From positions 62,001-126,000 of IMG/VR virus record IMGVR_UViG_3300025121_000282: DNA of 64,000 nucleotides. The stretch is one strand, 5' to 3'. How positions within the stretch are numbered: position 1 is the first letter of the stretch; every line of letters starts with the position of its first letter. The notes under the pieces are model-generated. The model had not been told where the DNA came from. It ran no database searches and saw only the letters and a list, made by a program, of their open reading frames with translations. The position numbers and the translations under genes were made by a program. Below are positions 24,647 through 51,064 of the stretch, one piece after another.

Positions 24647-24968
24647 TGCCCGGTGAGGGAGTCGGACCCTCACGCTCTTGCGAGCGGCGGATTTTCTTCG
24701 CTCTACGAATTTCTTCGCTCTCCATTTTACTGGAGATTTGTGCGCTGGACTTTGTCTTCACCCGTTCTGGGTGGTCGCCGTTAAGTCTCTACACCTTCCT
24801 CCTTGTCAGGGAGGCTTGGCTCGGCGTTGTCTCGCTTCTTTTGAAGGAAGCAGGGAGTTCACCGAATTTGACGACATTCACTCTAGCCATTCCTGGCTAG
24901 GTGCTCAAATTGGATGTAGTCTCCATCCTACTTAAGTCCGCTGCGTCTACCGGTTTCGCCAACCGGGC
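24647..24968 (-). tRNA. trnL: tRNA-Leu(UAA), interrupted by group I intron
   Basis: Exons 24934-24968 and 24647-24695 join into a class II cloverleaf, anticodon loop CU-UAA-AA; no encoded CCA. Confidence 0.93.
24696..24933 (-). ncRNA. group I intron (IC3-like), 238 nt, in tRNA-Leu(UAA) after U34
   Basis: P/Q/R/S-like blocks AAATTCGGTGAA, CCGAGCCAAG, GAAGGTGTAGAGACT, AAAGTCCA; 5' exon ends in U, intron ends in G. Confidence 0.93.
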
Positions 24969-30168: not shown

Positions 30169-31590
30169 TTGAAAGCAAGAAGCACTATTCCCGAATCTTC
30201 AACTAATCCTGGCAAACTCCAGGCACTCAGTAATCTGTATCAGGAATATTTGAAGTACATGGAAGTTTGTGTGGGGTTGATGATTAAAGACAAGGTATTT
30301 AGTCTAAAGCCCTCAGAAAGAATGTTGTACTTTCCAAATTCCAGCACATTGACTGTGAATATAAAAGCCAGTTGTCAAATGCAGTCAATACAACTGGTTA
30401 ACAGTTGGGTAGCTGGTGTTTATGTTAGAATTTTAAGGAAGTATATCGGAAAGCAAAAATTTATTGATTCAGAAGCTAAACAACTTTATACGATCGGAAA
30501 ATATCGTCTTACTCATGGTGGTAAATTTGGAAATGCTGAGGTTTCCCAAAAATTAGTTGACCTTTATTGGTCTTGGGTTTGGAATCCCGAAATTGTGGGC
30601 AATCCTCCAAGAATCACTTACAAAATCCCAATGAGGATGACAGAGCACACGGTTGTTGTTGAACCACCAAAAAACACCGTTCATTTTAATGGTTTGTGGT
30701 TAAAGTTTTCTTCCCTGGTTTCAAAACAGCGGATTTCAATTCCCCTCAAAGTCACACCACACCTCCATCGGTTTGTTGGTTTGGCAAACATTGCTCTTAC
30801 AGTTTATGTCAGAAAGACGCGCATTGGGTGGCAGTTTCTCTTTACTGACAAATCTGAGGAACCCACTTTTGATGGTTCAGTGGGTAAGGTTGGAATAGAC
30901 GTTGGTTTAAATACTTTAGCTGCTACCAGCAGTGGAGAACTACATGGGTATAAATTTAAAAAGAAATTTGAGTATTTAAAAAAGAGGGTACAAGACGCAA
31001 GAGCAAATCGCCAAAGACAGGGTTTAAAGGATGACTCTTTAAAACTTTGGAAACTAGAACAACGCTTAAGTGGTCAGATCAAAACGGCTGTTGGTTCCAT
31101 TGCTAATAAACTTGTCAAGAAATATAAAGACCACACATTTGTCGTTGAAGATCTTGACCTCTCAGGATGTAAGGGTTCAAAGCGTTTTGCCTACAAAGCT
31201 CTTCAAAGCTCTTTAGCCCGAAAGGCTGTGATCGAGAAAATAAATCCGGCCTACACTTCTCAACAATGTCCAAGTTGCGGGTGCATTGATAAAAATAACA
31301 GAAACGGGATAAAATTTTCTTGTAAATCATGTGGTCGAAAAGCTCATGCCGATTTTGTTGGCGGGTTCAATATTCTCAGACGTTCTGAGAATAAAAATAT
31401 TGGGCTGAAAACGTCACCAAAAGAAGCAAAGGTAATTTTGAGAGAGCGATACCTTAGAAATAGGAACAGTTCCTCAAAACTCCCTGGTCGTAAGACCAAA
31501 ATAAAGCGCGCTTGTACGGACAAGCCAGAGACTCACTACGGAGAAATGCCGCAAAGTCTCAAATCAGGCTCAACTGAAAAGTTAACCTGA
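30169..31590 (+). mobile_element. tnpB: TnpB (IS200/IS605/IS607-family RNA-guided nuclease), no transposase in window
   Basis: RuvC-I GIDVG, RuvC-II VEDL, NPAYTSQQCPSCG...CKSCG, RuvC-III HAD; antisense to neighbours. Confidence 0.88.
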
Positions 31591-39536: not shown

Positions 39537-40062
39537 ATGAAACTCACTAATTGTACTAACTGTGGTGACTCCACCACAAATCCAAGATTTTGTTCTAACT
39601 CGTGTTCGGCATCATGGGGCAACAAACTAAAGCCCCCATGTCCCAATGAAGAAGAAATGTAAACGTTGTGAAGTTATTATTCCCAGCAGAATAACTTATT
39701 GCACCAAATGTCAAGACCACTTTAAATCAAATACTAAGCGATGGAAAAACGAAACACTGGGTACACTACAGGCACGCCGAGTGTATCAGTCCAACTCACA
39801 AATTCGAGATGATGCTCGTGTGGTAGTGGACAAGCAGGGGTGGGTCAAATGCTGTGCGGTGTGTGAGTACTCTTTACACGTGCAAGTGTGTCACGTTAAA
39901 GCCATCAAAGACCACACGCCAGACACTATTATCTCGGCGATAAATGACCCATCCAACCTGATTTTGTTGTGTTCCAACCACCACTGGGAATTTGACCATG
40001 GCCTCTTGGACATTAAAGAAATTCGTGCTAGGCAGGGATCGAACCTGCGACCACTCGCTTAG
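39537..40062 (+). pseudogene. HNH endonuclease with N-terminal Zn finger, frameshifted at a C5 run (~39633)
   Basis: MKLTNCTNCG...FCSNSCS in one frame, then KKKCKRC...HVQVCH...NLILLCSNHHWEFD; 3' end overlaps tRNA-Arg. Confidence 0.75.
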
Positions 40063-40311
40063 CTTACCACTATAACTTTCGTTACTCTCTTGTGGAGATT
40101 TGTGGCCTGGACTTTGTCTTCACCCGTTCTGGGTGGCCCCCGTCAAGTCTCTACACCTTTTCCCGTTTAATAGGGAACTTGGCTCGGCGTTGTCTCGCTT
40201 CTTTTGAAGGAAGCAGGGAGTTCACCGAATTTGAGGGCATTCACACTAGACATTCCTATCTAGGTGCTCCTATTTCAAAGGCGAGCGCTCTATCCGCTGA
40301 GCTACTAGCAC
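40024..40311 (-). tRNA. trnR: tRNA-Arg(UCU), interrupted by group I intron
   Basis: Exons 40278-40311 and 40024-40062 give loop CU-UCU-AA; A20, G73; no CCA. Confidence 0.9.
40063..40277 (-). ncRNA. group I intron (IC3-like), 215 nt, in tRNA-Arg(UCU) after U34
   Basis: Same P/Q/R/S blocks as the Leu intron; terminal G; covarying P3. Confidence 0.9.
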
Positions 40312-40582: not shown

Positions 40583-40772
40583 ACCTCAGCCATAACTGGT
40601 CTAATTCTGGTGTGGTTTCCATTCTCTGCTCCAAGAATTGAAAAATGGGCTACAAGTGAGTTGACGGTGATGTGACTATCGACCATCGAGCCGCGGCCTT
40701 ACCACAAGTAGGCCACACCGTGGGGACCGGGAGGCTTATACCTGCTTGTAACCCAAACTTTGATGAAAATTG

Positions 40773-40846
40773 TAGCCGCTGAGGGACTCGGACCCCCGAC
40801 ATCCTCCGTGTAGGGGAGGCACTCTAACCAACTGAGTTAAGCGGCC
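40773..40846 (-). tRNA. trnV: tRNA-Val(UAC), atypical C33
   Basis: Cloverleaf, loop CC-UAC-AC, T-loop UCCGAGU, A73, no CCA. Confidence 0.85.
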
Positions 40847-40853
40847 ACAGAAA

Positions 40854-41507
40854 CTATGTTTGAAGAATCTTGTCCCAACGCTCTGCTGCGTCTGGGGAAA
40901 TGGTTATTGCGTTCTTATACAAAGATGTTTCTTGCCAAGACCAAATATAACATGTGTCTGTGTACAAATCGTATGCAATAATAAAATCGAATTCATGGGA
41001 TTGGTATCTTTTACCCGGTTGTATCAGCTTGGTTTTGGCTAGAACTCTTGGGGCATGGATCAATCTAATAGCTGGCTGACCATGTCCCTTGTCTGACCTA
41101 GCAGTTTTAACTTGTACTTTCCATAGCTTATTAGTTTGGGGTAGGAACATTATTATGTCCACAGTGGCACAATCAAACACTGACTTGTATGTCTCAATAC
41201 CTCTAGCCAAAGCCCGCGCCATAACTGCACACTCTGACAAGCTTCCAATGTCACGACTAGTTAATTTAGCTCGGTCGATCGATTGGTGGAGCCAAGATTC
41301 CGTCCCACGTTCTTTTTTATTGCTGATTGTATGTGGGATGTGTTTGCTTTTTATCTCAGTTTCAGTGAGTGGGTGGTCTCTCAATAGTGCACTAAGTGCT
41401 CCCTTGGAAACCCCAGTCAGGCCCCTAATCTCATTAAGGGACCTACGTTCATCAGTCCTAAGACGCAGGCACTCGGCTCTAAGACTCTCATCTAAACGTG
41501 TAGCCAT
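40854..41507 (-). CDS. free-standing PD-(D/E)XK endonuclease (I-Ssp6803I/PDDEXK_5-like) with N-terminal HTH
   Basis: GSLSECAVMARAL...VDII...KVQVKT; N-terminal RSLNEIRGLTGVSKGALSALL. Confidence 0.75.
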   Translation of the reverse strand: MATRLDESLRAECLRLRTDERRSLNEIRGLTGVSKGALSALLRDHPLTETEIKSKHIPHTISNKKERGTESWLHQSIDRAKLTSRDIGSLSECAVMARALARGIETYKSVFDCATVDIIMFLPQTNKLWKVQVKTARSDKGHGQPAIRLIHAPRVLAKTKLIQPGKRYQSHEFDFIIAYDLYTDTCYIWSWQETSLYKNAITISPDAAERWDKILQT

Positions 41508-41521
41508 GTGAACCCTCGTAG

Positions 41522-41563
41522 TAGTTCACATGAACTATAACACAAGTATTGACACTTGCACAA
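41522..41563 (-). promoter_or_regulatory. putative sigma70-like promoter with overlapping palindromic operator
   Basis: TTGTGC-18 bp-TATAGT with TGn extension; TAGTTCA-CA-TGAACTA palindrome at 41522-41537. Confidence 0.35.
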
Positions 41564-41669
41564 TTAAGTATCCCTATTGGGTTGTCAAAGACACCATTTT
41601 GCGTTTGAGCTTAATAAGACCGCTAGTGAGGCCCTTGAAAATCAGTGTGTAAGAGTGTAGGAACAGTCG

Positions 41670-41972
41670 TGCGCCCACCTGGACTTGAACCAGGAACCGT
41701 GGCGTTATGCAATCCACTTCGGCTTTCGCCGCTCTTCCGTTGCTGAAAGATTTGTGGTCTGGACTATCCCTTAACCGTGTTCCTTTATCGGAATTTAGGT
41801 TCTCCGTGTCTAGTCTCTACACCTTCCCTTTGCTTAAAGGGCTTGGCTCGGGATTGGCATCAGCATAACCTGTTAAGCGTTCCCCGAATTTACGGAGTTG
41901 TCACGCAAAAGTTTCCTTTTGCGCAGCCCTTAAACTCAAGCACCCCGCTCTGACCATTTGAGCTATGGGCGC
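41670..41972 (-). tRNA. tRNA(CAU), elongator Met or Ile2, interrupted by group I intron
   Basis: Exons 41939-41972 and 41670-41709; loop CU-CAU-AA; G1-C72 paired; no initiator GGG/CCC. Confidence 0.88.
41710..41938 (-). ncRNA. group I intron (IC3-like), 229 nt, after U33 of tRNA(CAU)
   Basis: AAATTCGGGGAA, CCCGAGCCAAG, GAAGGTGTAGAGACT, GATAGTCCA; P3 CTCCGT/ACGGAG; terminal G. Confidence 0.9.
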
Positions 41973-42207
41973 AAAAGTCCCTACACTCTTACACACCTGA
42001 TTTTTCACAGATCCCAATCAATTATTTAGGGAGTGGCACCACCCCGGTGTCAGGATTTCAGCAATGTTAGAACCGGGTCATTATAGCTGAACCTGTAGTG
42101 CGGGCCAGTTATAACCCTGTCACCTGCGTCAGTCCGAGGGGGTCAGGAACTCCTGGAGCAGCATTTCGCCCGGATTGACAAGAATTCGGTTCTTCGGGAG
42201 CATCGTT

Positions 42208-42504
42208 TCACCCATCGGCCTGGAACACCTTGATGTGTTCCAATTGCTCCGATGACACGTCCCGTTGGACTTCCAGGTCAAAGCGGGTCTGCAGGCTCAT
42301 CCAGAACTCAGCCGTCGTTCCGAAGAACTTAGCCAGACGCAAGGCCGTGTCCGCCGTGGTGCCACGTTTGCCGTGGACGATCTCGTTGATCCTCACAGGC
42401 GGCACACCAATGTCCTTGGAGAGCCTGTACTGGCTGATGGCCAGGGGCTTCAGGAAATCCTCATCGAGGACCTCACCAGGATGAATCGGATCAAGCCTAT
42501 CCAT
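42208..42504 (-). CDS. higA: HigA-family antitoxin (XRE HTH)
   Basis: PIHPGEVLDEDFLKPL...RINEIVHGKRG...ALRLAKFFGTTAEFWMSLQ. Confidence 0.92.
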   Translation of the reverse strand: MDRLDPIHPGEVLDEDFLKPLAISQYRLSKDIGVPPVRINEIVHGKRGTTADTALRLAKFFGTTAEFWMSLQTRFDLEVQRDVSSEQLEHIKVFQADG

Positions 42505-49094: not shown

Positions 49095-49593
49095 ACTCCA
49101 CCGTAATTTTTATAGTCTTCTCACCGGGCAATTTTATTCTTGTAATGTGCTTGTCTACATGTTCGGTACCCAAGCCGCCAGCGCCCCAATGAGAACCTAC
49201 TGCGCCAATTTCGGGTCCGTATGAGTGTGGTGGCACCAAATAGGCAGCTTGGCACATTATGTTGGAAGCCAGATAGTGTGTTAATGGTCTATCCGAGTCC
49301 CGTTTTGCAGCGGTGTTCCACTCTTCAAATGACCTACCGACAATCTTCTGAACTTCCTGGTCATTGGGGTTTAGCCTAGAAATATCAGTTGTTACCCTGT
49401 GCAAAGAGACACTTCCACCCTCTTTTGGTGGTGTTGGAAAGTCCTTGCTCAGTTCAACGGATTTTGTGTCCCAGTTATAAACAACCCAAAATGTTAACTG
49501 TCTCTCTTGCATTTGTACCACCTCTATACCATTATACAGAGGATTCTTTTTTATGTGTCGGAAGGGATATAAAAAATTTGGACCCCCTGTCAA
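49087..49593 (-). CDS. hypothetical protein
   Basis: 168 aa ORF; start uncertain. Confidence 0.5.
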   Translation of the reverse strand: MTGGPNFLYPFRHIKKNPLYNGIEVVQMQERQLTFWVVYNWDTKSVELSKDFPTPPKEGGSVSLHRVTTDISRLNPNDQEVQKIVGRSFEEWNTAAKRDSDRPLTHYLASNIMCQAAYLVPPHSYGPEIGAVGSHWGAGGLGTEHVDKHITRIKLPGEKTIKITVEYE

Positions 49594-51064
49594 CTTCTGA
49601 TTCCAATCTTATGGTGCCACCAAGTCTCTCTATTATCATTTTGGTCAAGTACAGCCCAACACCAGTACCTGGAAATTCTGTGGTCAGTCTCTCAAATAAC
49701 AAAAACAACTTTTTGTGATACACAGGGTCTATGCCCACCCCGTTATCTTCTACTACCACAACAGGTGCAAAACTTTGTGGGTCGGCGATGACATGTATTT
49801 TTACCATTTTTACAATACTTTTGTTAAATTTGAGACCGTTATCTATGAGATTGTTGAAGGCCTCTGTTAAAAGTGTTTGATCTCCCAACACCATAGGAAG
49901 GTCTGAACTTATTTTTATGTAACAATCTGAGGCTTCTCTACAGTACGCCAGCCTCATAGGCCTGAGTATGGTGTTCAGGTCTACTGGAAGCGCCTTCATA
50001 TTTTTTAATTTTCGTATGTCAGACACCTTGTGGAGACCATCTATTATGTCGGATAGCAGTACTGCATCTTGTTTTATGTCCGTAATGTACTCTTGCATCC
50101 CATCTGGAAGTTTAAAGTCTTCCTCTATTATCTGCGCAGCACCCAAGATGCTGCGAGGCGGACTTCTTAATTGGTGTGCTGCCACATTAGCAAAACCAGA
50201 TAAAGCAACATTCGCCTGTTCTAGCTCGTGTATGGTGTTTTTTAGGTGTTCTTGTTGTTTGACAAACTCAGTCAGGTTCGTTGCGCTCATGTACATACCC
50301 CCGGATTGGCGGTCCCGGGTTATACTCCACAATAAGTGTACCCTGTTACCATTGGCTGTTCGTGTTTTTGCTTTTGCTCTTGTTATTTTTGTAAAACTGT
50401 CCACCTCCTCTTCCTCAAATTCTTCCTCAAATTCTTCCTCAAATTCTATCCATTCTTTCCACGGTCTACTTGTCAATTCTAGTTCTGACCGCCCCAATAG
50501 CTGTTGGAGGCCCTTACTTACAAAAGACCATTTCTCAAGATCAGTGGGTCGAGTCGTGGCAACCAACTCTAGCCCCACTAATAACCAGTACTTGAGGTCT
50601 ATGTCCCTTTTGTGGTGTTCGCTTATATCCCTTGCTGTAGCATATACCTGAGTTCCATCAGACGCAGCCGTCCATTCCAGGTATACTTCTGCCTTGTCTT
50701 TTCGTATGTATCTGTTTACAAATCCCATCGTGTGGTGGTCTATATTTTGTAGCGCAACAGCTTCTTTTATAGTCTTCTCTCTGTCTTGTGGGTGTACAAA
50801 GTTAATAAGTGGTTTTGACTTGAGTTCCTCTAATGAGTACCCAATAGTTTTAACCCACCCTTTAGACAAAAATGTGAACACACCATTTGAGACGGTGCAA
50901 TGCAAATCACTAGAACTGTTAAACCATTTGTCCAGTAGTTCTTTTTGATTTTTGTACTCTAAAGATTTTTTGTAATATTCTGTTTTTTTAAGCCAAAAAA
51001 GAAAATACGGTAATACCAACAAAAATAGCAACACCCAGTCATGGAACTCTAATTCTTGAATCAT
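49532..51064 (-). CDS. membrane-anchored PAS-domain sensor histidine kinase
   Basis: TM helix, PAS (LGYSLEEL...VHPQDRE), H-box AAHQLRSP, N-box NLIDNGLKF, DNGVGI, GTGVGL. Confidence 0.9.
   Translation of the reverse strand: MIQELEFHDWVLLFLLVLPYFLFWLKKTEYYKKSLEYKNQKELLDKWFNSSSDLHCTVSNGVFTFLSKGWVKTIGYSLEELKSKPLINFVHPQDREKTIKEAVALQNIDHHTMGFVNRYIRKDKAEVYLEWTAASDGTQVYATARDISEHHKRDIDLKYWLLVGLELVATTRPTDLEKWSFVSKGLQQLLGRSELELTSRPWKEWIEFEEEFEEEFEEEEVDSFTKITRAKAKTRTANGNRVHLLWSITRDRQSGGMYMSATNLTEFVKQQEHLKNTIHELEQANVALSGFANVAAHQLRSPPRSILGAAQIIEEDFKLPDGMQEYITDIKQDAVLLSDIIDGLHKVSDIRKLKNMKALPVDLNTILRPMRLAYCREASDCYIKISSDLPMVLGDQTLLTEAFNNLIDNGLKFNKSIVKMVKIHVIADPQSFAPVVVVEDNGVGIDPVYHKKLFLLFERLTTEFPGTGVGLYLTKMIIERLGGTIRLESEVDRGSKFFISLPTHKKESSV
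50409..50446. repeat. 12-bp tandem repeat (about 3 copies) encoding EFEE in the kinase linker
   Basis: (tcttcctcaaat)n gives EFEEEFEEEFEEEE. Confidence 0.8.

What the first reader, a model, noticed from the sequence alone, without database searches (positions are those of the whole stretch)
40854..41972. Free-standing I-Ssp6803I-like endonuclease beside the ORF-less CAU intron: candidate collaborative homing
The PD-(D/E)XK ORF resembles the family whose founding member, I-Ssp6803I, is encoded inside the Synechocystis tRNA-fMet intron and cuts the intronless tRNA. Here it lies outside, about 160 bp downstream of the intron-bearing CAU tRNA, on the same strand. Inference: it cuts intronless CAU-tRNA alleles of co-infecting phages, and the intron confers immunity, as in known free-standing endonuclease/intron collaborative homing.
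Basis: inference. Interest (0 to 1): 0.75.

Follow-up and report, generated by a model that had tools for sequence, protein, structure and literature searches.

The report
Stand-alone tRNA-cluster homing endonuclease beside intron
A 315-kb groundwater phage carries a stand-alone relative of the tRNA-cutting homing endonuclease I-Ssp6803I just downstream of a tRNA(CAU) gene split by an ORF-less self-splicing intron. The same layout recurs in cyanobacteria, so the nuclease and intron may spread as a team, but its DNA target is not shown.

Summary
ORF 40854..41507(-), 217 aa, is a true I-Ssp6803I homologue: PF11645 above its cut-off, best PDB fold match 2OST, and E92/D117/Q132/K134 in the catalytic columns. 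It also has an N-terminal HTH domain. It starts 162 nt after a tRNA(CAU) gene (41972..41670) split by a 229-nt ORF-less group I intron between U33 and C34.

- The cyanobacterial tRNA-fMet intron sits at the same U33|C34 position.
- In 9 of 16 cyanobacterial genomes with an I-Ssp6803I orthologue, that gene is free-standing downstream of the intron-split tRNA.
- One genome with an uninterrupted tRNA-fMet has an orthologue that has lost its catalytic half.

Evidence against:
- The phage protein belongs to a large separate HTH-fused clade (324 clusters at E<=1e-30). In about 37 loci it lies in tRNA arrays beside many different intron-less tRNAs.
- Its closest relative (60% identity) sits beside an uninterrupted CAU tRNA-like gene.
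- No intron-less or endonuclease-less allele of this phage was found, and the target is untested.

Verdict: it is a free-standing homing endonuclease (about 0.85). Collaborative homing at tRNA(CAU) is the best single mechanism (about 0.45). A different target in the tRNA cluster is nearly as likely (about 0.35).

The parts
40854..41507 (-). Free-standing HTH + PD-(D/E)XK (PDDEXK_5, I-Ssp6803I-like) endonuclease gene, 217 aa. The stop TAG is at 40854-40856.
41328..41507 (-). N-terminal helix-turn-helix domain (residues 1 to about 60). I-Ssp6803I lacks it.
   Evidence: Model helices 7-18, 24-31, 35-41 and 49-55. The 2OST alignment covers only the C-terminal ~146 residues. Homologues carry precomputed HTH Pfam hits.
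40857..41294 (-). Nuclease domain (residues ~72-217) with E92, D117, Q132 and K134 in the catalytic columns, and the C-terminal motif AERWDKIL.
41939..41972 (-). tRNA(CAU) 5' exon. It ends with U33.
41710..41938 (-). ORF-less group I intron, 229 nt, inserted between U33 and C34. Its last base is G.
41670..41709 (-). tRNA(CAU) 3' exon. It starts with CAUAA. G1-C72 makes this an elongator-type tRNA, not an initiator.
41977..41996 (.). Upstream arm of a 20-nt inverted repeat that brackets the tRNA(CAU) gene.
   Evidence: 95% complementary. Unique in the genome. Conserved in L012 with a paired A/G change.
41645..41664 (.). Downstream arm of the same inverted repeat. It lies between the tRNA and the endonuclease gene.
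40772..40846 (-). tRNA-Val(UAC). It starts 7 nt after the endonuclease stop codon.

Best explanation
The ORF is an intact free-standing homing endonuclease of the I-Ssp6803I (PDDEXK_5) family with an extra N-terminal HTH domain. It lives in the tRNA gene cluster of a huge phage.

The most likely single mechanism is as follows. During co-infection with a related phage, the enzyme cuts an uninterrupted tRNA(CAU) gene in or next to the anticodon-loop DNA (...GCU|CAUAAC...). The resident copy escapes because the 229-nt intron splits that site at U33|C34. Repair of the break from the resident genome then copies the intron, the endonuclease gene 162 nt downstream and the flanking tRNAs into the rival. 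The intron splices out of the pre-tRNA, so the tRNA stays usable.

Shown here:
- homology, fold and conserved catalytic columns;
- the free-standing position;
- the ORF-less group I intron at the same site as the cyanobacterial tRNA-fMet intron;
- the same gene layout in cyanobacteria.

Inferred:
- enzymatic activity;
- the target sequence;
- immunity by the intron;
- co-conversion.
For: 1. Family, fold and catalytic columns E92/D117/Q132/K134.
2. [quoted passage not shown]
3. Sequence inspection and the structural alignment put the 5' splice U.G wobble of the phage CAU intron and the cyanobacterial fMet introns in the same column. Both have CAUAAC as the first 3'-exon bases.
4. Of 16 strong I-Ssp6803I orthologues in 401 cyanobacterial genomes, 6 are inside the intron. 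Nine are free-standing on the same strand downstream of the tRNA-fMet with an ORF-less 237-244-nt intron, and 7 of those lie within about 130 nt.
5. The one copy beside an uninterrupted tRNA-fMet (L103) has lost the D and QxK catalytic segment.
6. Of 11 tRNA genes in the phage, the endonuclease follows the CAU one. No uninterrupted copy of the spliced junction exists in the genome at up to 3 mismatches.
7. Eight other phage records carrying this clade have no group I intron, so the adjacency here is not a generic by-product.
8. Intron-less phage tRNA-Met genes with the identical 17-nt anticodon arm exist in nature.
Against: - The protein is only about 22% identical to I-Ssp6803I. It belongs to a separate HTH-fused clade whose other sampled members (about 37 loci) flank many different intron-less tRNAs. 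Specificity therefore varies, and introns are not the usual route to immunity.
- The sister gene (60% identity, catalytic residues intact) lies at the syntenic site beside an uninterrupted CAU tRNA-like gene.
- In most of the clade the tightest, most regular contact is with the downstream tRNA, not the upstream one.
- Two other tRNA introns in this genome have no PDDEXK_5 partner.
- All 24 contigs of this phage carry both the intron and the endonuclease gene, so no polymorphism informs linkage.
- There are no cleavage data.
Confidence: 0.45

Rival explanations
1. It is a free-standing homing endonuclease of the tRNA cluster whose target has nothing to do with the intron. It would cut at the 5' part of tRNA-Val(UAC), or at the junction that forms when tRNA(CAU) and tRNA-Val are adjacent in endonuclease-less phages. 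This is how T4 SegB cuts a tRNA intergenic region. The resident genome would be immune because the insertion splits the site or because of base differences. The intron would be an independent selfish element, carried along at most as a passenger.
For: - In about 27 of 33 loci with a downstream tRNA, the ORF ends within about 20 nt of that tRNA. In 14 loci its stop codon is the tRNA's own T8-A9-G10.
- The flanking tRNAs are intron-less in all other loci sampled.
- In L012 the endonuclease gene is followed by a 20-nt 5' fragment of a window-like tRNA-Val and then a different complete tRNA-Val(UAC). This is a recombination scar at that gene.
- The sister gene coexists with an uninterrupted CAU gene.
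- T4 SegB is a precedent (PMC2988022).
Against: - It does not explain why the upstream neighbour is the one tRNA whose intron sits at the I-Ssp6803I site. By chance that is about 1 in 11.
- It does not explain the parallel cyanobacterial layout.
- Tight packing against the downstream tRNA is expected for any insert in a dense array. The -10 overlap is only modestly above the one-in-three expected from reading frame alone.
- The protein tree does not tie clades to the downstream tRNA type.
Confidence: 0.35
2. It is a domesticated or non-homing nuclease. The HTH-PDDEXK_5 protein would serve the phage, for example by cutting host or rival DNA or by regulating the tRNA cluster, rather than acting as a selfish homing element.
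For: - The clade is large and its catalytic columns are well conserved.
- A cyanobacterial PDDEXK_5 clade sits stably about 75 nt downstream of an uninterrupted tRNA-Arg(UCU) in several genomes.
- The gene is identical in contigs from several samples and studies.
Against: - The position within arrays differs from phage to phage, between different tRNA pairs.
- The distribution is sporadic: one copy here, and few IMG/VR hits.
- L012 carries recombination scars.
- Truncated copies occur.
All of these are typical of mobile endonuclease genes.
Confidence: 0.1
3. It is an inactive relic: an endonuclease gene that no longer cuts and persists only by linkage.
For: No polymorphism for its presence is seen in this phage population.
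Against: - The ORF is full length with a good ribosome-binding site.
- All four catalytic columns and the other invariant residues are kept.
- The structural model is confident, pLDDT 94.
- The 60%-identical sister is also intact, which implies purifying selection.
Confidence: 0.07

Closest known systems
I-Ssp6803I (Synechocystis tRNA-fMet intron endonuclease, PDB 2OST; Pfam PDDEXK_5)
   Same: Same family by sequence and fold across the whole 148-residue chain. It shares the KVQVK motif and the E/D/QxK catalytic columns. It is associated with a tRNA(CAU) gene whose group I intron sits at U33|C34.
   Different: About 22% identity. The phage protein has an extra ~60-residue N-terminal HTH and is encoded outside the intron. 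The tRNA is an elongator type (G1-C72), not the initiator, and the anticodon stem differs at about half its positions. The host is a phage, not a cyanobacterial chromosome. The target is untested.
Free-standing I-Ssp6803I orthologues downstream of intron-split tRNA-fMet in cyanobacteria. These were found here. I found no description of them in the paper library.
   Same: Same gene order, strand and short spacing: a tRNA(CAU) with an ORF-less intron at U33|C34, then the endonuclease gene.
   Different: They are close orthologues of I-Ssp6803I (135-187 bits to PF11645), have no HTH and are chromosomal. The phage introns and proteins are only distant relatives of them (introns about 60% identical).
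Collaborative homing: F-CphI with the psbA intron of cyanophage S-PM2. Also trans homing: T4 mobE with the I-TevIII-defective nrdB intron.
   Same: A free-standing endonuclease gene next to a gene that carries an endonuclease-less group I intron (PMC2988022; PMC2790892 and PMC6083498).
   Different: Those targets are protein-coding genes and the enzymes are Endo VII-like or HNH. Cleavage at the intron insertion site was shown experimentally there. Here it is only inferred.
T4 SegB
   Same: A free-standing homing endonuclease inserted between two phage tRNA genes. It drives preferential inheritance of the tRNA region (PMC2988022, Table 1).
   Different: SegB is GIY-YIG, not PD-(D/E)XK. Its target is a tRNA intergenic region and no intron is involved.
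Stand-alone PDDEXK_5 genes counted in Jug jumbo gut phages
   Same: Stand-alone PDDEXK_5 homing endonuclease genes in huge phages that are rich in group I introns (PMC12880540).
   Different: That paper reports them among introns that split protein-coding genes. It makes no link to tRNA genes.

Membership tests
PDDEXK_5 / I-Ssp6803I homing endonuclease family | Matches Pfam PF11645 above the curated cut-off | tested here: met
   37 bits against a cut-off of 26.1, E 4e-9. 37.9 bits in the genome search.
PDDEXK_5 / I-Ssp6803I homing endonuclease family | Fold of I-Ssp6803I (restriction-endonuclease-like core plus its C-terminal part) | tested here: met
   Foldseek best hit is 2OST A/B: E 5e-11, target TM 0.78-0.79, rmsd 2.2-2.4 over 146 columns. 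Model pLDDT is 94.
PDDEXK_5 / I-Ssp6803I homing endonuclease family | Catalytic constellation E ... D ... Q-x-K | tested here: met
   E92, D117, Q132 and K134 align with the E, YD and KVQVK residues of I-Ssp6803I orthologues. Across 55 clade representatives the columns are E in 54/55, D in 55/55, Q in 52/55, and K in 40 with R in 15.
PDDEXK_5 / I-Ssp6803I homing endonuclease family | Encoded inside the group I intron of the tRNA gene it targets | tested here: not met
   The intron is 229 nt without an ORF. The gene starts 162 nt after the tRNA's 3' end.
PDDEXK_5 / I-Ssp6803I homing endonuclease family | Cuts the intron-less tRNA(CAU) gene at the anticodon-loop DNA | not testable with these tools
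Collaborative homing pair (free-standing endonuclease plus ORF-less intron) | ORF-less group I intron in a conserved gene, with an intact ribozyme core | tested here: met
   RF00028 E 6e-10 genome-wide, though below the gathering score. It fits a 12-intron consensus with 38 covarying pairs. Splicing itself was not tested.
Collaborative homing pair (free-standing endonuclease plus ORF-less intron) | Free-standing endonuclease gene immediately next to the intron-bearing gene | tested here: met
   162 nt downstream on the same strand, with no terminator-like site between them.
Collaborative homing pair (free-standing endonuclease plus ORF-less intron) | The endonuclease recognition site spans the intron insertion site, so intron-plus alleles are immune | not testable with these tools
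   The only indirect evidence is that the genome has no uninterrupted copy of the spliced junction at up to 3 mismatches.
Collaborative homing pair (free-standing endonuclease plus ORF-less intron) | Intron and endonuclease gene are co-distributed among relatives | tested here: inconclusive
   All contigs of this phage carry both. The sister L012 has the gene without the intron. About 37 clade members have no intron nearby. In the cyanobacterial clade, 9 have both, and the one without the intron has a broken gene.
HTH-PDDEXK_5 clade of phage tRNA arrays (defined here) | Protein of about 200-220 aa with an N-terminal HTH, the nuclease domain and a C-terminal AERWDK[LI] motif | tested here: met
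HTH-PDDEXK_5 clade of phage tRNA arrays (defined here) | Lies between same-strand tRNA genes, with the ORF end abutting the next tRNA | tested here: met
   tRNA(CAU) is 162 nt upstream and tRNA-Val(UAC) is 7 nt downstream.
T4 SegB-type tRNA-cluster homing endonuclease | GIY-YIG catalytic domain | tested here: not met
   The fold is PD-(D/E)XK.
T4 SegB-type tRNA-cluster homing endonuclease | Free-standing gene between phage tRNA genes that cuts the tRNA region of endonuclease-less relatives | tested here: inconclusive
   The position requirement is met. Cleavage cannot be tested here.

The most novel reading that the evidence does not exclude
PDDEXK_5 as a whole may be a tRNA-gene-specific homing endonuclease family caught at every stage of mobile-intron formation. 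The stages seen are:
- free-standing beside intron-less tRNAs (phage arrays; cyanobacterial tRNA-Arg(UCU));
- free-standing beside an ORF-less intron at its presumed cut site (this phage; 9 cyanobacteria);
- inside the intron (I-Ssp6803I).
On this reading, this phage locus would be the first collaborative-homing pair in a tRNA gene and in a phage tRNA cluster.
Probability: 0.4. Interest if true: 0.75.

Novelty: new variant of a known kind. Interest (0 to 1): 0.6.

Why it matters
Homing endonucleases and group I introns are thought to meet by a free-standing nuclease 'pre-adapted' to an intron's insertion site. Natural intermediates are few, and all known ones are in protein-coding genes. This locus and the cyanobacterial loci found alongside it would give a graded natural series for one enzyme family at one tRNA site. 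That series can be tested with simple cleavage assays.

The work also shows two further things. Phage tRNA clusters are colonised by a large, undescribed HTH-fused branch of the I-Ssp6803I family. Phage tRNA genes do carry group I introns, which a 2014 review (PMC3984707) said had not been seen. Both matter for annotating phage tRNAs and for understanding how tRNA clusters are exchanged between phages.

Tried and rejected
- phmmer of the single protein against PDB found nothing. A 5-sequence profile was needed.
- tblastn against cultured phages gave no hit. Megablast of 10 kb against plasmids gave none, and tblastn against plasmids gave one weak Rhizobium hit.
- I first suspected a plasmid because of histidine kinases, TnpB and DUF932. 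I dropped this because the record is an IMG/VR virus with CheckV completeness 100%.
- The tree of 35 clade members is star-like. It could not tie clades to the upstream or the downstream tRNA.
- I looked for intron-less or endonuclease-less alleles. Only Logan contigs were available for read laying. They are uniform and break at the Arg/Leu intron repeat. The one 'joint' has a 22-nt side and is probably another organism's intron.
- IMG/VR scans with the inverted-repeat arm and with a conserved downstream motif gave only chance hits or none.
- Complex prediction with four protein copies plus the intron-less CAU arm DNA was not folded, so it is no evidence either way.
- I tested whether every intron in the genome has an adjacent endonuclease gene. 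The Arg intron has an HNH gene. The ORFs flanking the Leu intron match no family.
- L008 first looked like a recombinant allele. I read it as a probable low-coverage chimeric assembly joined through conserved intron core.
- The papers on I-Ssp6803I cleavage (Bonocora & Shub 2001; Zhao et al. 2007) and the cyanobacterial intron papers are not held in the library. Details of the cut site come only from my own recollection and are not used as evidence.

Full report
WHAT IS THERE

The window is bases 62001-126000 of a single 314,886-bp IMG/VR virus record from groundwater. CheckV rates it 100% complete.

The ORF at 40854..41507(-) encodes 217 aa. It has an ATG start preceded by GAGGG. It matches Pfam PF11645 (PDDEXK_5) at 37 bits, above the 26.1 cut-off, over residues 84-203. 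It is the only such gene in the genome.

A single-sequence search of PDB found nothing. A profile of five homologues hit 2OST, I-Ssp6803I, at E 1e-9. An AlphaFold model (pLDDT 94) has 2OST as its best PDB match. The values are E 4.5e-11, target-normalised TM 0.78-0.79, and 146 columns of the 148-residue chain.

E92, D117, Q132 and K134 occupy the columns of the E, YD and KVQVK residues of I-Ssp6803I orthologues. These columns are conserved across 55 clade representatives. Residues 1 to about 60 form a helix-turn-helix domain that I-Ssp6803I lacks.

THE SPLIT tRNA

ARAGORN in default mode misses this gene. With its intron option it finds a split tRNA at 41669-41972 but misreads the anticodon.

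Reading the sequence gives these coordinates:
- 5' exon: 41972..41939
- intron: 41938..41710 (229 nt)
- 3' exon: 41709..41670

The anticodon loop is CU|CAUAA, so the intron lies between U33 and C34 and ends in G. G1-C72 makes this an elongator-type tRNA (Met or Ile2), not an initiator.

The intron scores 40.9 bits against RF00028. That is under the gathering score of 50, but E is 2.5e-8 locally and 6e-10 genome-wide. Aligned with 11 other tRNA introns, it fits a consensus of 69 pairs, of which 38 show compensatory changes. It is too short for an endonuclease gene.

The endonuclease ORF begins 162 nt after the tRNA on the same strand. It ends 7 nt before tRNA-Val(UAC) at 40846..40772.

THE SURROUNDINGS

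The genome has exactly three group I introns, all in tRNA genes and all in this window:
- the CAU intron;
- one in tRNA-Arg(UCU), 40311..40024, intron 40277..40063;
- one in tRNA-Leu(UAA), 24968..24647, at the classical U34|A35 site.

The Arg and Leu introns are 82% identical to each other. They are only 52-55% identical to the CAU intron.

An HNH_2 ORF at 39646..40062(+) runs antisense through the Arg 3' exon and stops exactly at the exon/intron boundary. The ORFs beside the Leu intron match no family.

A 20-nt inverted repeat brackets the tRNA(CAU) gene. It is unique in the genome.

THE FAMILY OF THE PHAGE PROTEIN

The full-length architecture (HTH plus nuclease, about 200-220 aa) is common in metagenomes. 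There are 324 50%-identity clusters at E<=1e-30. Many lie on contigs of 340-530 kb.

I fetched about 43 loci from IMG/VR, metagenomes and two MAG contigs. Nearly all lie inside same-strand tRNA arrays, 30-180 nt downstream of one tRNA. The ORF ends within about 20 nt of the next tRNA. In 14 loci the stop codon is the next tRNA's own T8-A9-G10.

The flanking tRNAs are of many kinds, including Gly, Pro, Val, Asp, Thr, Ala and Ile. No group I intron was found near any of them. This was checked by Rfam scans of 16 loci and by an nhmmer profile of the three phage introns over all loci. Eight of the phage records, searched whole, have no RF00028 hit.

The closest relative (P0002, 60% identity) comes from the same aquifer project. 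It sits at the syntenic site, with the same bracketing inverted repeat carrying a paired base change. The gene between the repeat arms there is an uninterrupted and rather degenerate CAU tRNA-like sequence with a different anticodon stem. Its endonuclease gene is followed by a 20-nt fragment of a window-like tRNA-Val and then a different full tRNA-Val(UAC).

A tree of 35 members is star-like and does not link clades to either neighbour.

THE CYANOBACTERIAL COMPARISON

I searched 401 cyanobacterial genomes with PF11645 and found 16 strong I-Ssp6803I orthologues:
- Six lie inside a tRNA-fMet intron of about 650 nt.
- Nine are free-standing on the same strand downstream of a tRNA-fMet that carries an ORF-less 237-244-nt intron. 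Seven of these are within about 130 nt, one is about 775 nt away, and one is N-terminally truncated.
- One has no tRNA-fMet within 1.5 kb.

That intron is also at U33|C34. Its splice-site U.G wobble falls in the same alignment column as in the phage.

One further genome (L103) has an uninterrupted tRNA-fMet followed by an orthologue whose D and QxK segment has been replaced.

A second cyanobacterial clade lies about 75 nt downstream of an uninterrupted tRNA-Arg(UCU).

I found no description of the free-standing arrangement in the paper library.

WEIGHING THE HYPOTHESES

For collaborative homing at tRNA(CAU):
- the family precedent;
- the identical insertion site, and the shared GCUCAUAAC sequence once the exons are joined;
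- the cyanobacterial parallel, including the broken copy beside the intact target;
- the position after the one CAU tRNA among 11 tRNAs;
- the absence of any uninterrupted junction copy in the genome;
- the rarity of introns in other phages of the clade.

Against it:
- low identity to I-Ssp6803I;
- a clade whose members mostly manage without introns;
- the sister gene beside an uninterrupted CAU-like gene;
- the regular contact with the downstream tRNA;
- no polymorphic alleles;

My estimates are:
- about 0.85 that this is an active free-standing homing endonuclease;
- about 0.45 that its target is the intron-less CAU gene;
- about 0.35 that the target lies elsewhere in the tRNA cluster, in the manner of T4 SegB (PMC2988022);
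- about 0.1 that it is domesticated;
- under 0.1 that it is a relic.

NOVELTY

The enzyme family, free-standing homing endonucleases and collaborative homing are all known (PMC2988022, PMC2790892, PMC6083498). Stand-alone PDDEXK_5 genes have been counted in jumbo phages (PMC12880540).

Three things appear new:
- an HTH-fused branch that lives in phage tRNA arrays;
- a candidate collaborative pair in a tRNA gene;
- the matching cyanobacterial series.

A 2014 review stated that all phage introns then known were in protein-coding genes (PMC3984707). This genome contradicts that. So does an unannotated intron in a tRNA(CAU) of Klebsiella phage Muenster, which scores 104 bits against RF00028.

I rate this a new variant of a known kind, with interest 0.6.

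Noticed in passing
window 40024-40311 (-) and 39646-40062 (+): tRNA-Arg(UCU) is split by a 215-nt group I intron (40277..40063) after U34. A convergent HNH_2 endonuclease ORF reads antisense through the whole 3' exon. Its stop codon is the complement of the first three 3'-exon bases. This is a second possible free-standing endonuclease/ORF-less intron pair.
   Followed up: partly
window 24647-24968 (-): tRNA-Leu(UAA) carries a 238-nt group I intron at the classical U34|A35 site (RF00028 45 bits). It is 82% identical to the Arg(UCU) intron, which suggests a recent move between two tRNAs that share the CUU| 5' exon end. The flanking ORFs match no family.
   Followed up: partly
window 41645-41664 and 41977-41996: A 20-nt inverted repeat brackets the tRNA(CAU) gene and is unique in the genome. 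L012 keeps it, with a paired A/G change, around a quite different CAU tRNA-like insert. It could be a processing stem or the boundary of a swapped cassette.
   Followed up: partly
L084, L087, L088, L090-L092, L094, L095, L099, L103 (cyanobacterial genomes): I-Ssp6803I orthologues lie free-standing downstream of tRNA-fMet genes with an ORF-less intron. In L103 the tRNA-fMet is uninterrupted and the orthologue has lost its catalytic N-terminal half.
   Followed up: yes
L100-L102, L104, L107-L110 (cyanobacterial genomes): A separate PDDEXK_5 clade (75-82 bits, ORFs of 217-238 aa with a C-terminal extension) lies about 75 nt downstream of an uninterrupted tRNA-Arg(UCU).
   Followed up: no
L123 2380-2670 (-) = Klebsiella phage Muenster MT708547.1, about 302,830-303,120: An unannotated tRNA(CAU), Ile2-like, lies in the gap between the annotated tRNA-Asn and tRNA-Ser. 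Its group I intron (RF00028, 104 bits) is inserted after the anticodon (36/37). Related Escherichia and Klebsiella jumbo phages give the same blastn hit.
   Followed up: partly
L012 1741-2720: After the sister endonuclease gene come, in order: a 20-nt tRNA-Val 5' fragment, a different full tRNA-Val(UAC), a 248-aa ORF with an N-terminal HTH (a weak HTH_7 hit, possibly another endonuclease), and an orphan tRNA 3' half. The tRNA-Arg(UCU) further on is intron-less.
   Followed up: partly
L008 1-560: This contig joins a GC-rich bacterial tRNA-Leu(UAA) 5' exon and a different intron 5' half to the 3' part of the phage CAU intron. Coverage is 2.8x. It is probably a chimeric assembly through conserved intron core, but it shows a close bacterial relative of the intron in the same habitat.
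   Followed up: partly
L023 6825-6964, 7144-7285, 8200-8339; L024 8515-8652, 8997-9141: tRNA-like genes of about 140 nt carry a 65-70-nt insert after the anticodon arm, in huge-phage tRNA arrays. The nature of the insert is unknown.
   Followed up: no
L025/L026 4675-4997: A bacterial-type RNase P RNA (RF00010, 180 bits) lies inside a huge-phage tRNA array, next to a clade member.
   Followed up: no
genome C1 284600-284674 (outside the window): ARAGORN calls a tRNA with anticodon CUA, an amber suppressor type. The endonuclease ORF and many of its relatives end in TAG. I did not examine whether TAG is recoded in this phage.
   Followed up: no
window 30169-31590 (+), 49532-51064 (-), 42208-42504 (-): A TnpB/IS605 OrfB-like gene and a PAS histidine kinase lie in the phage window. 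An Xre/HigA-like HTH gene lies just upstream of the tRNA(CAU) cassette. L012 lacks the segment that holds the HTH gene.
   Followed up: no
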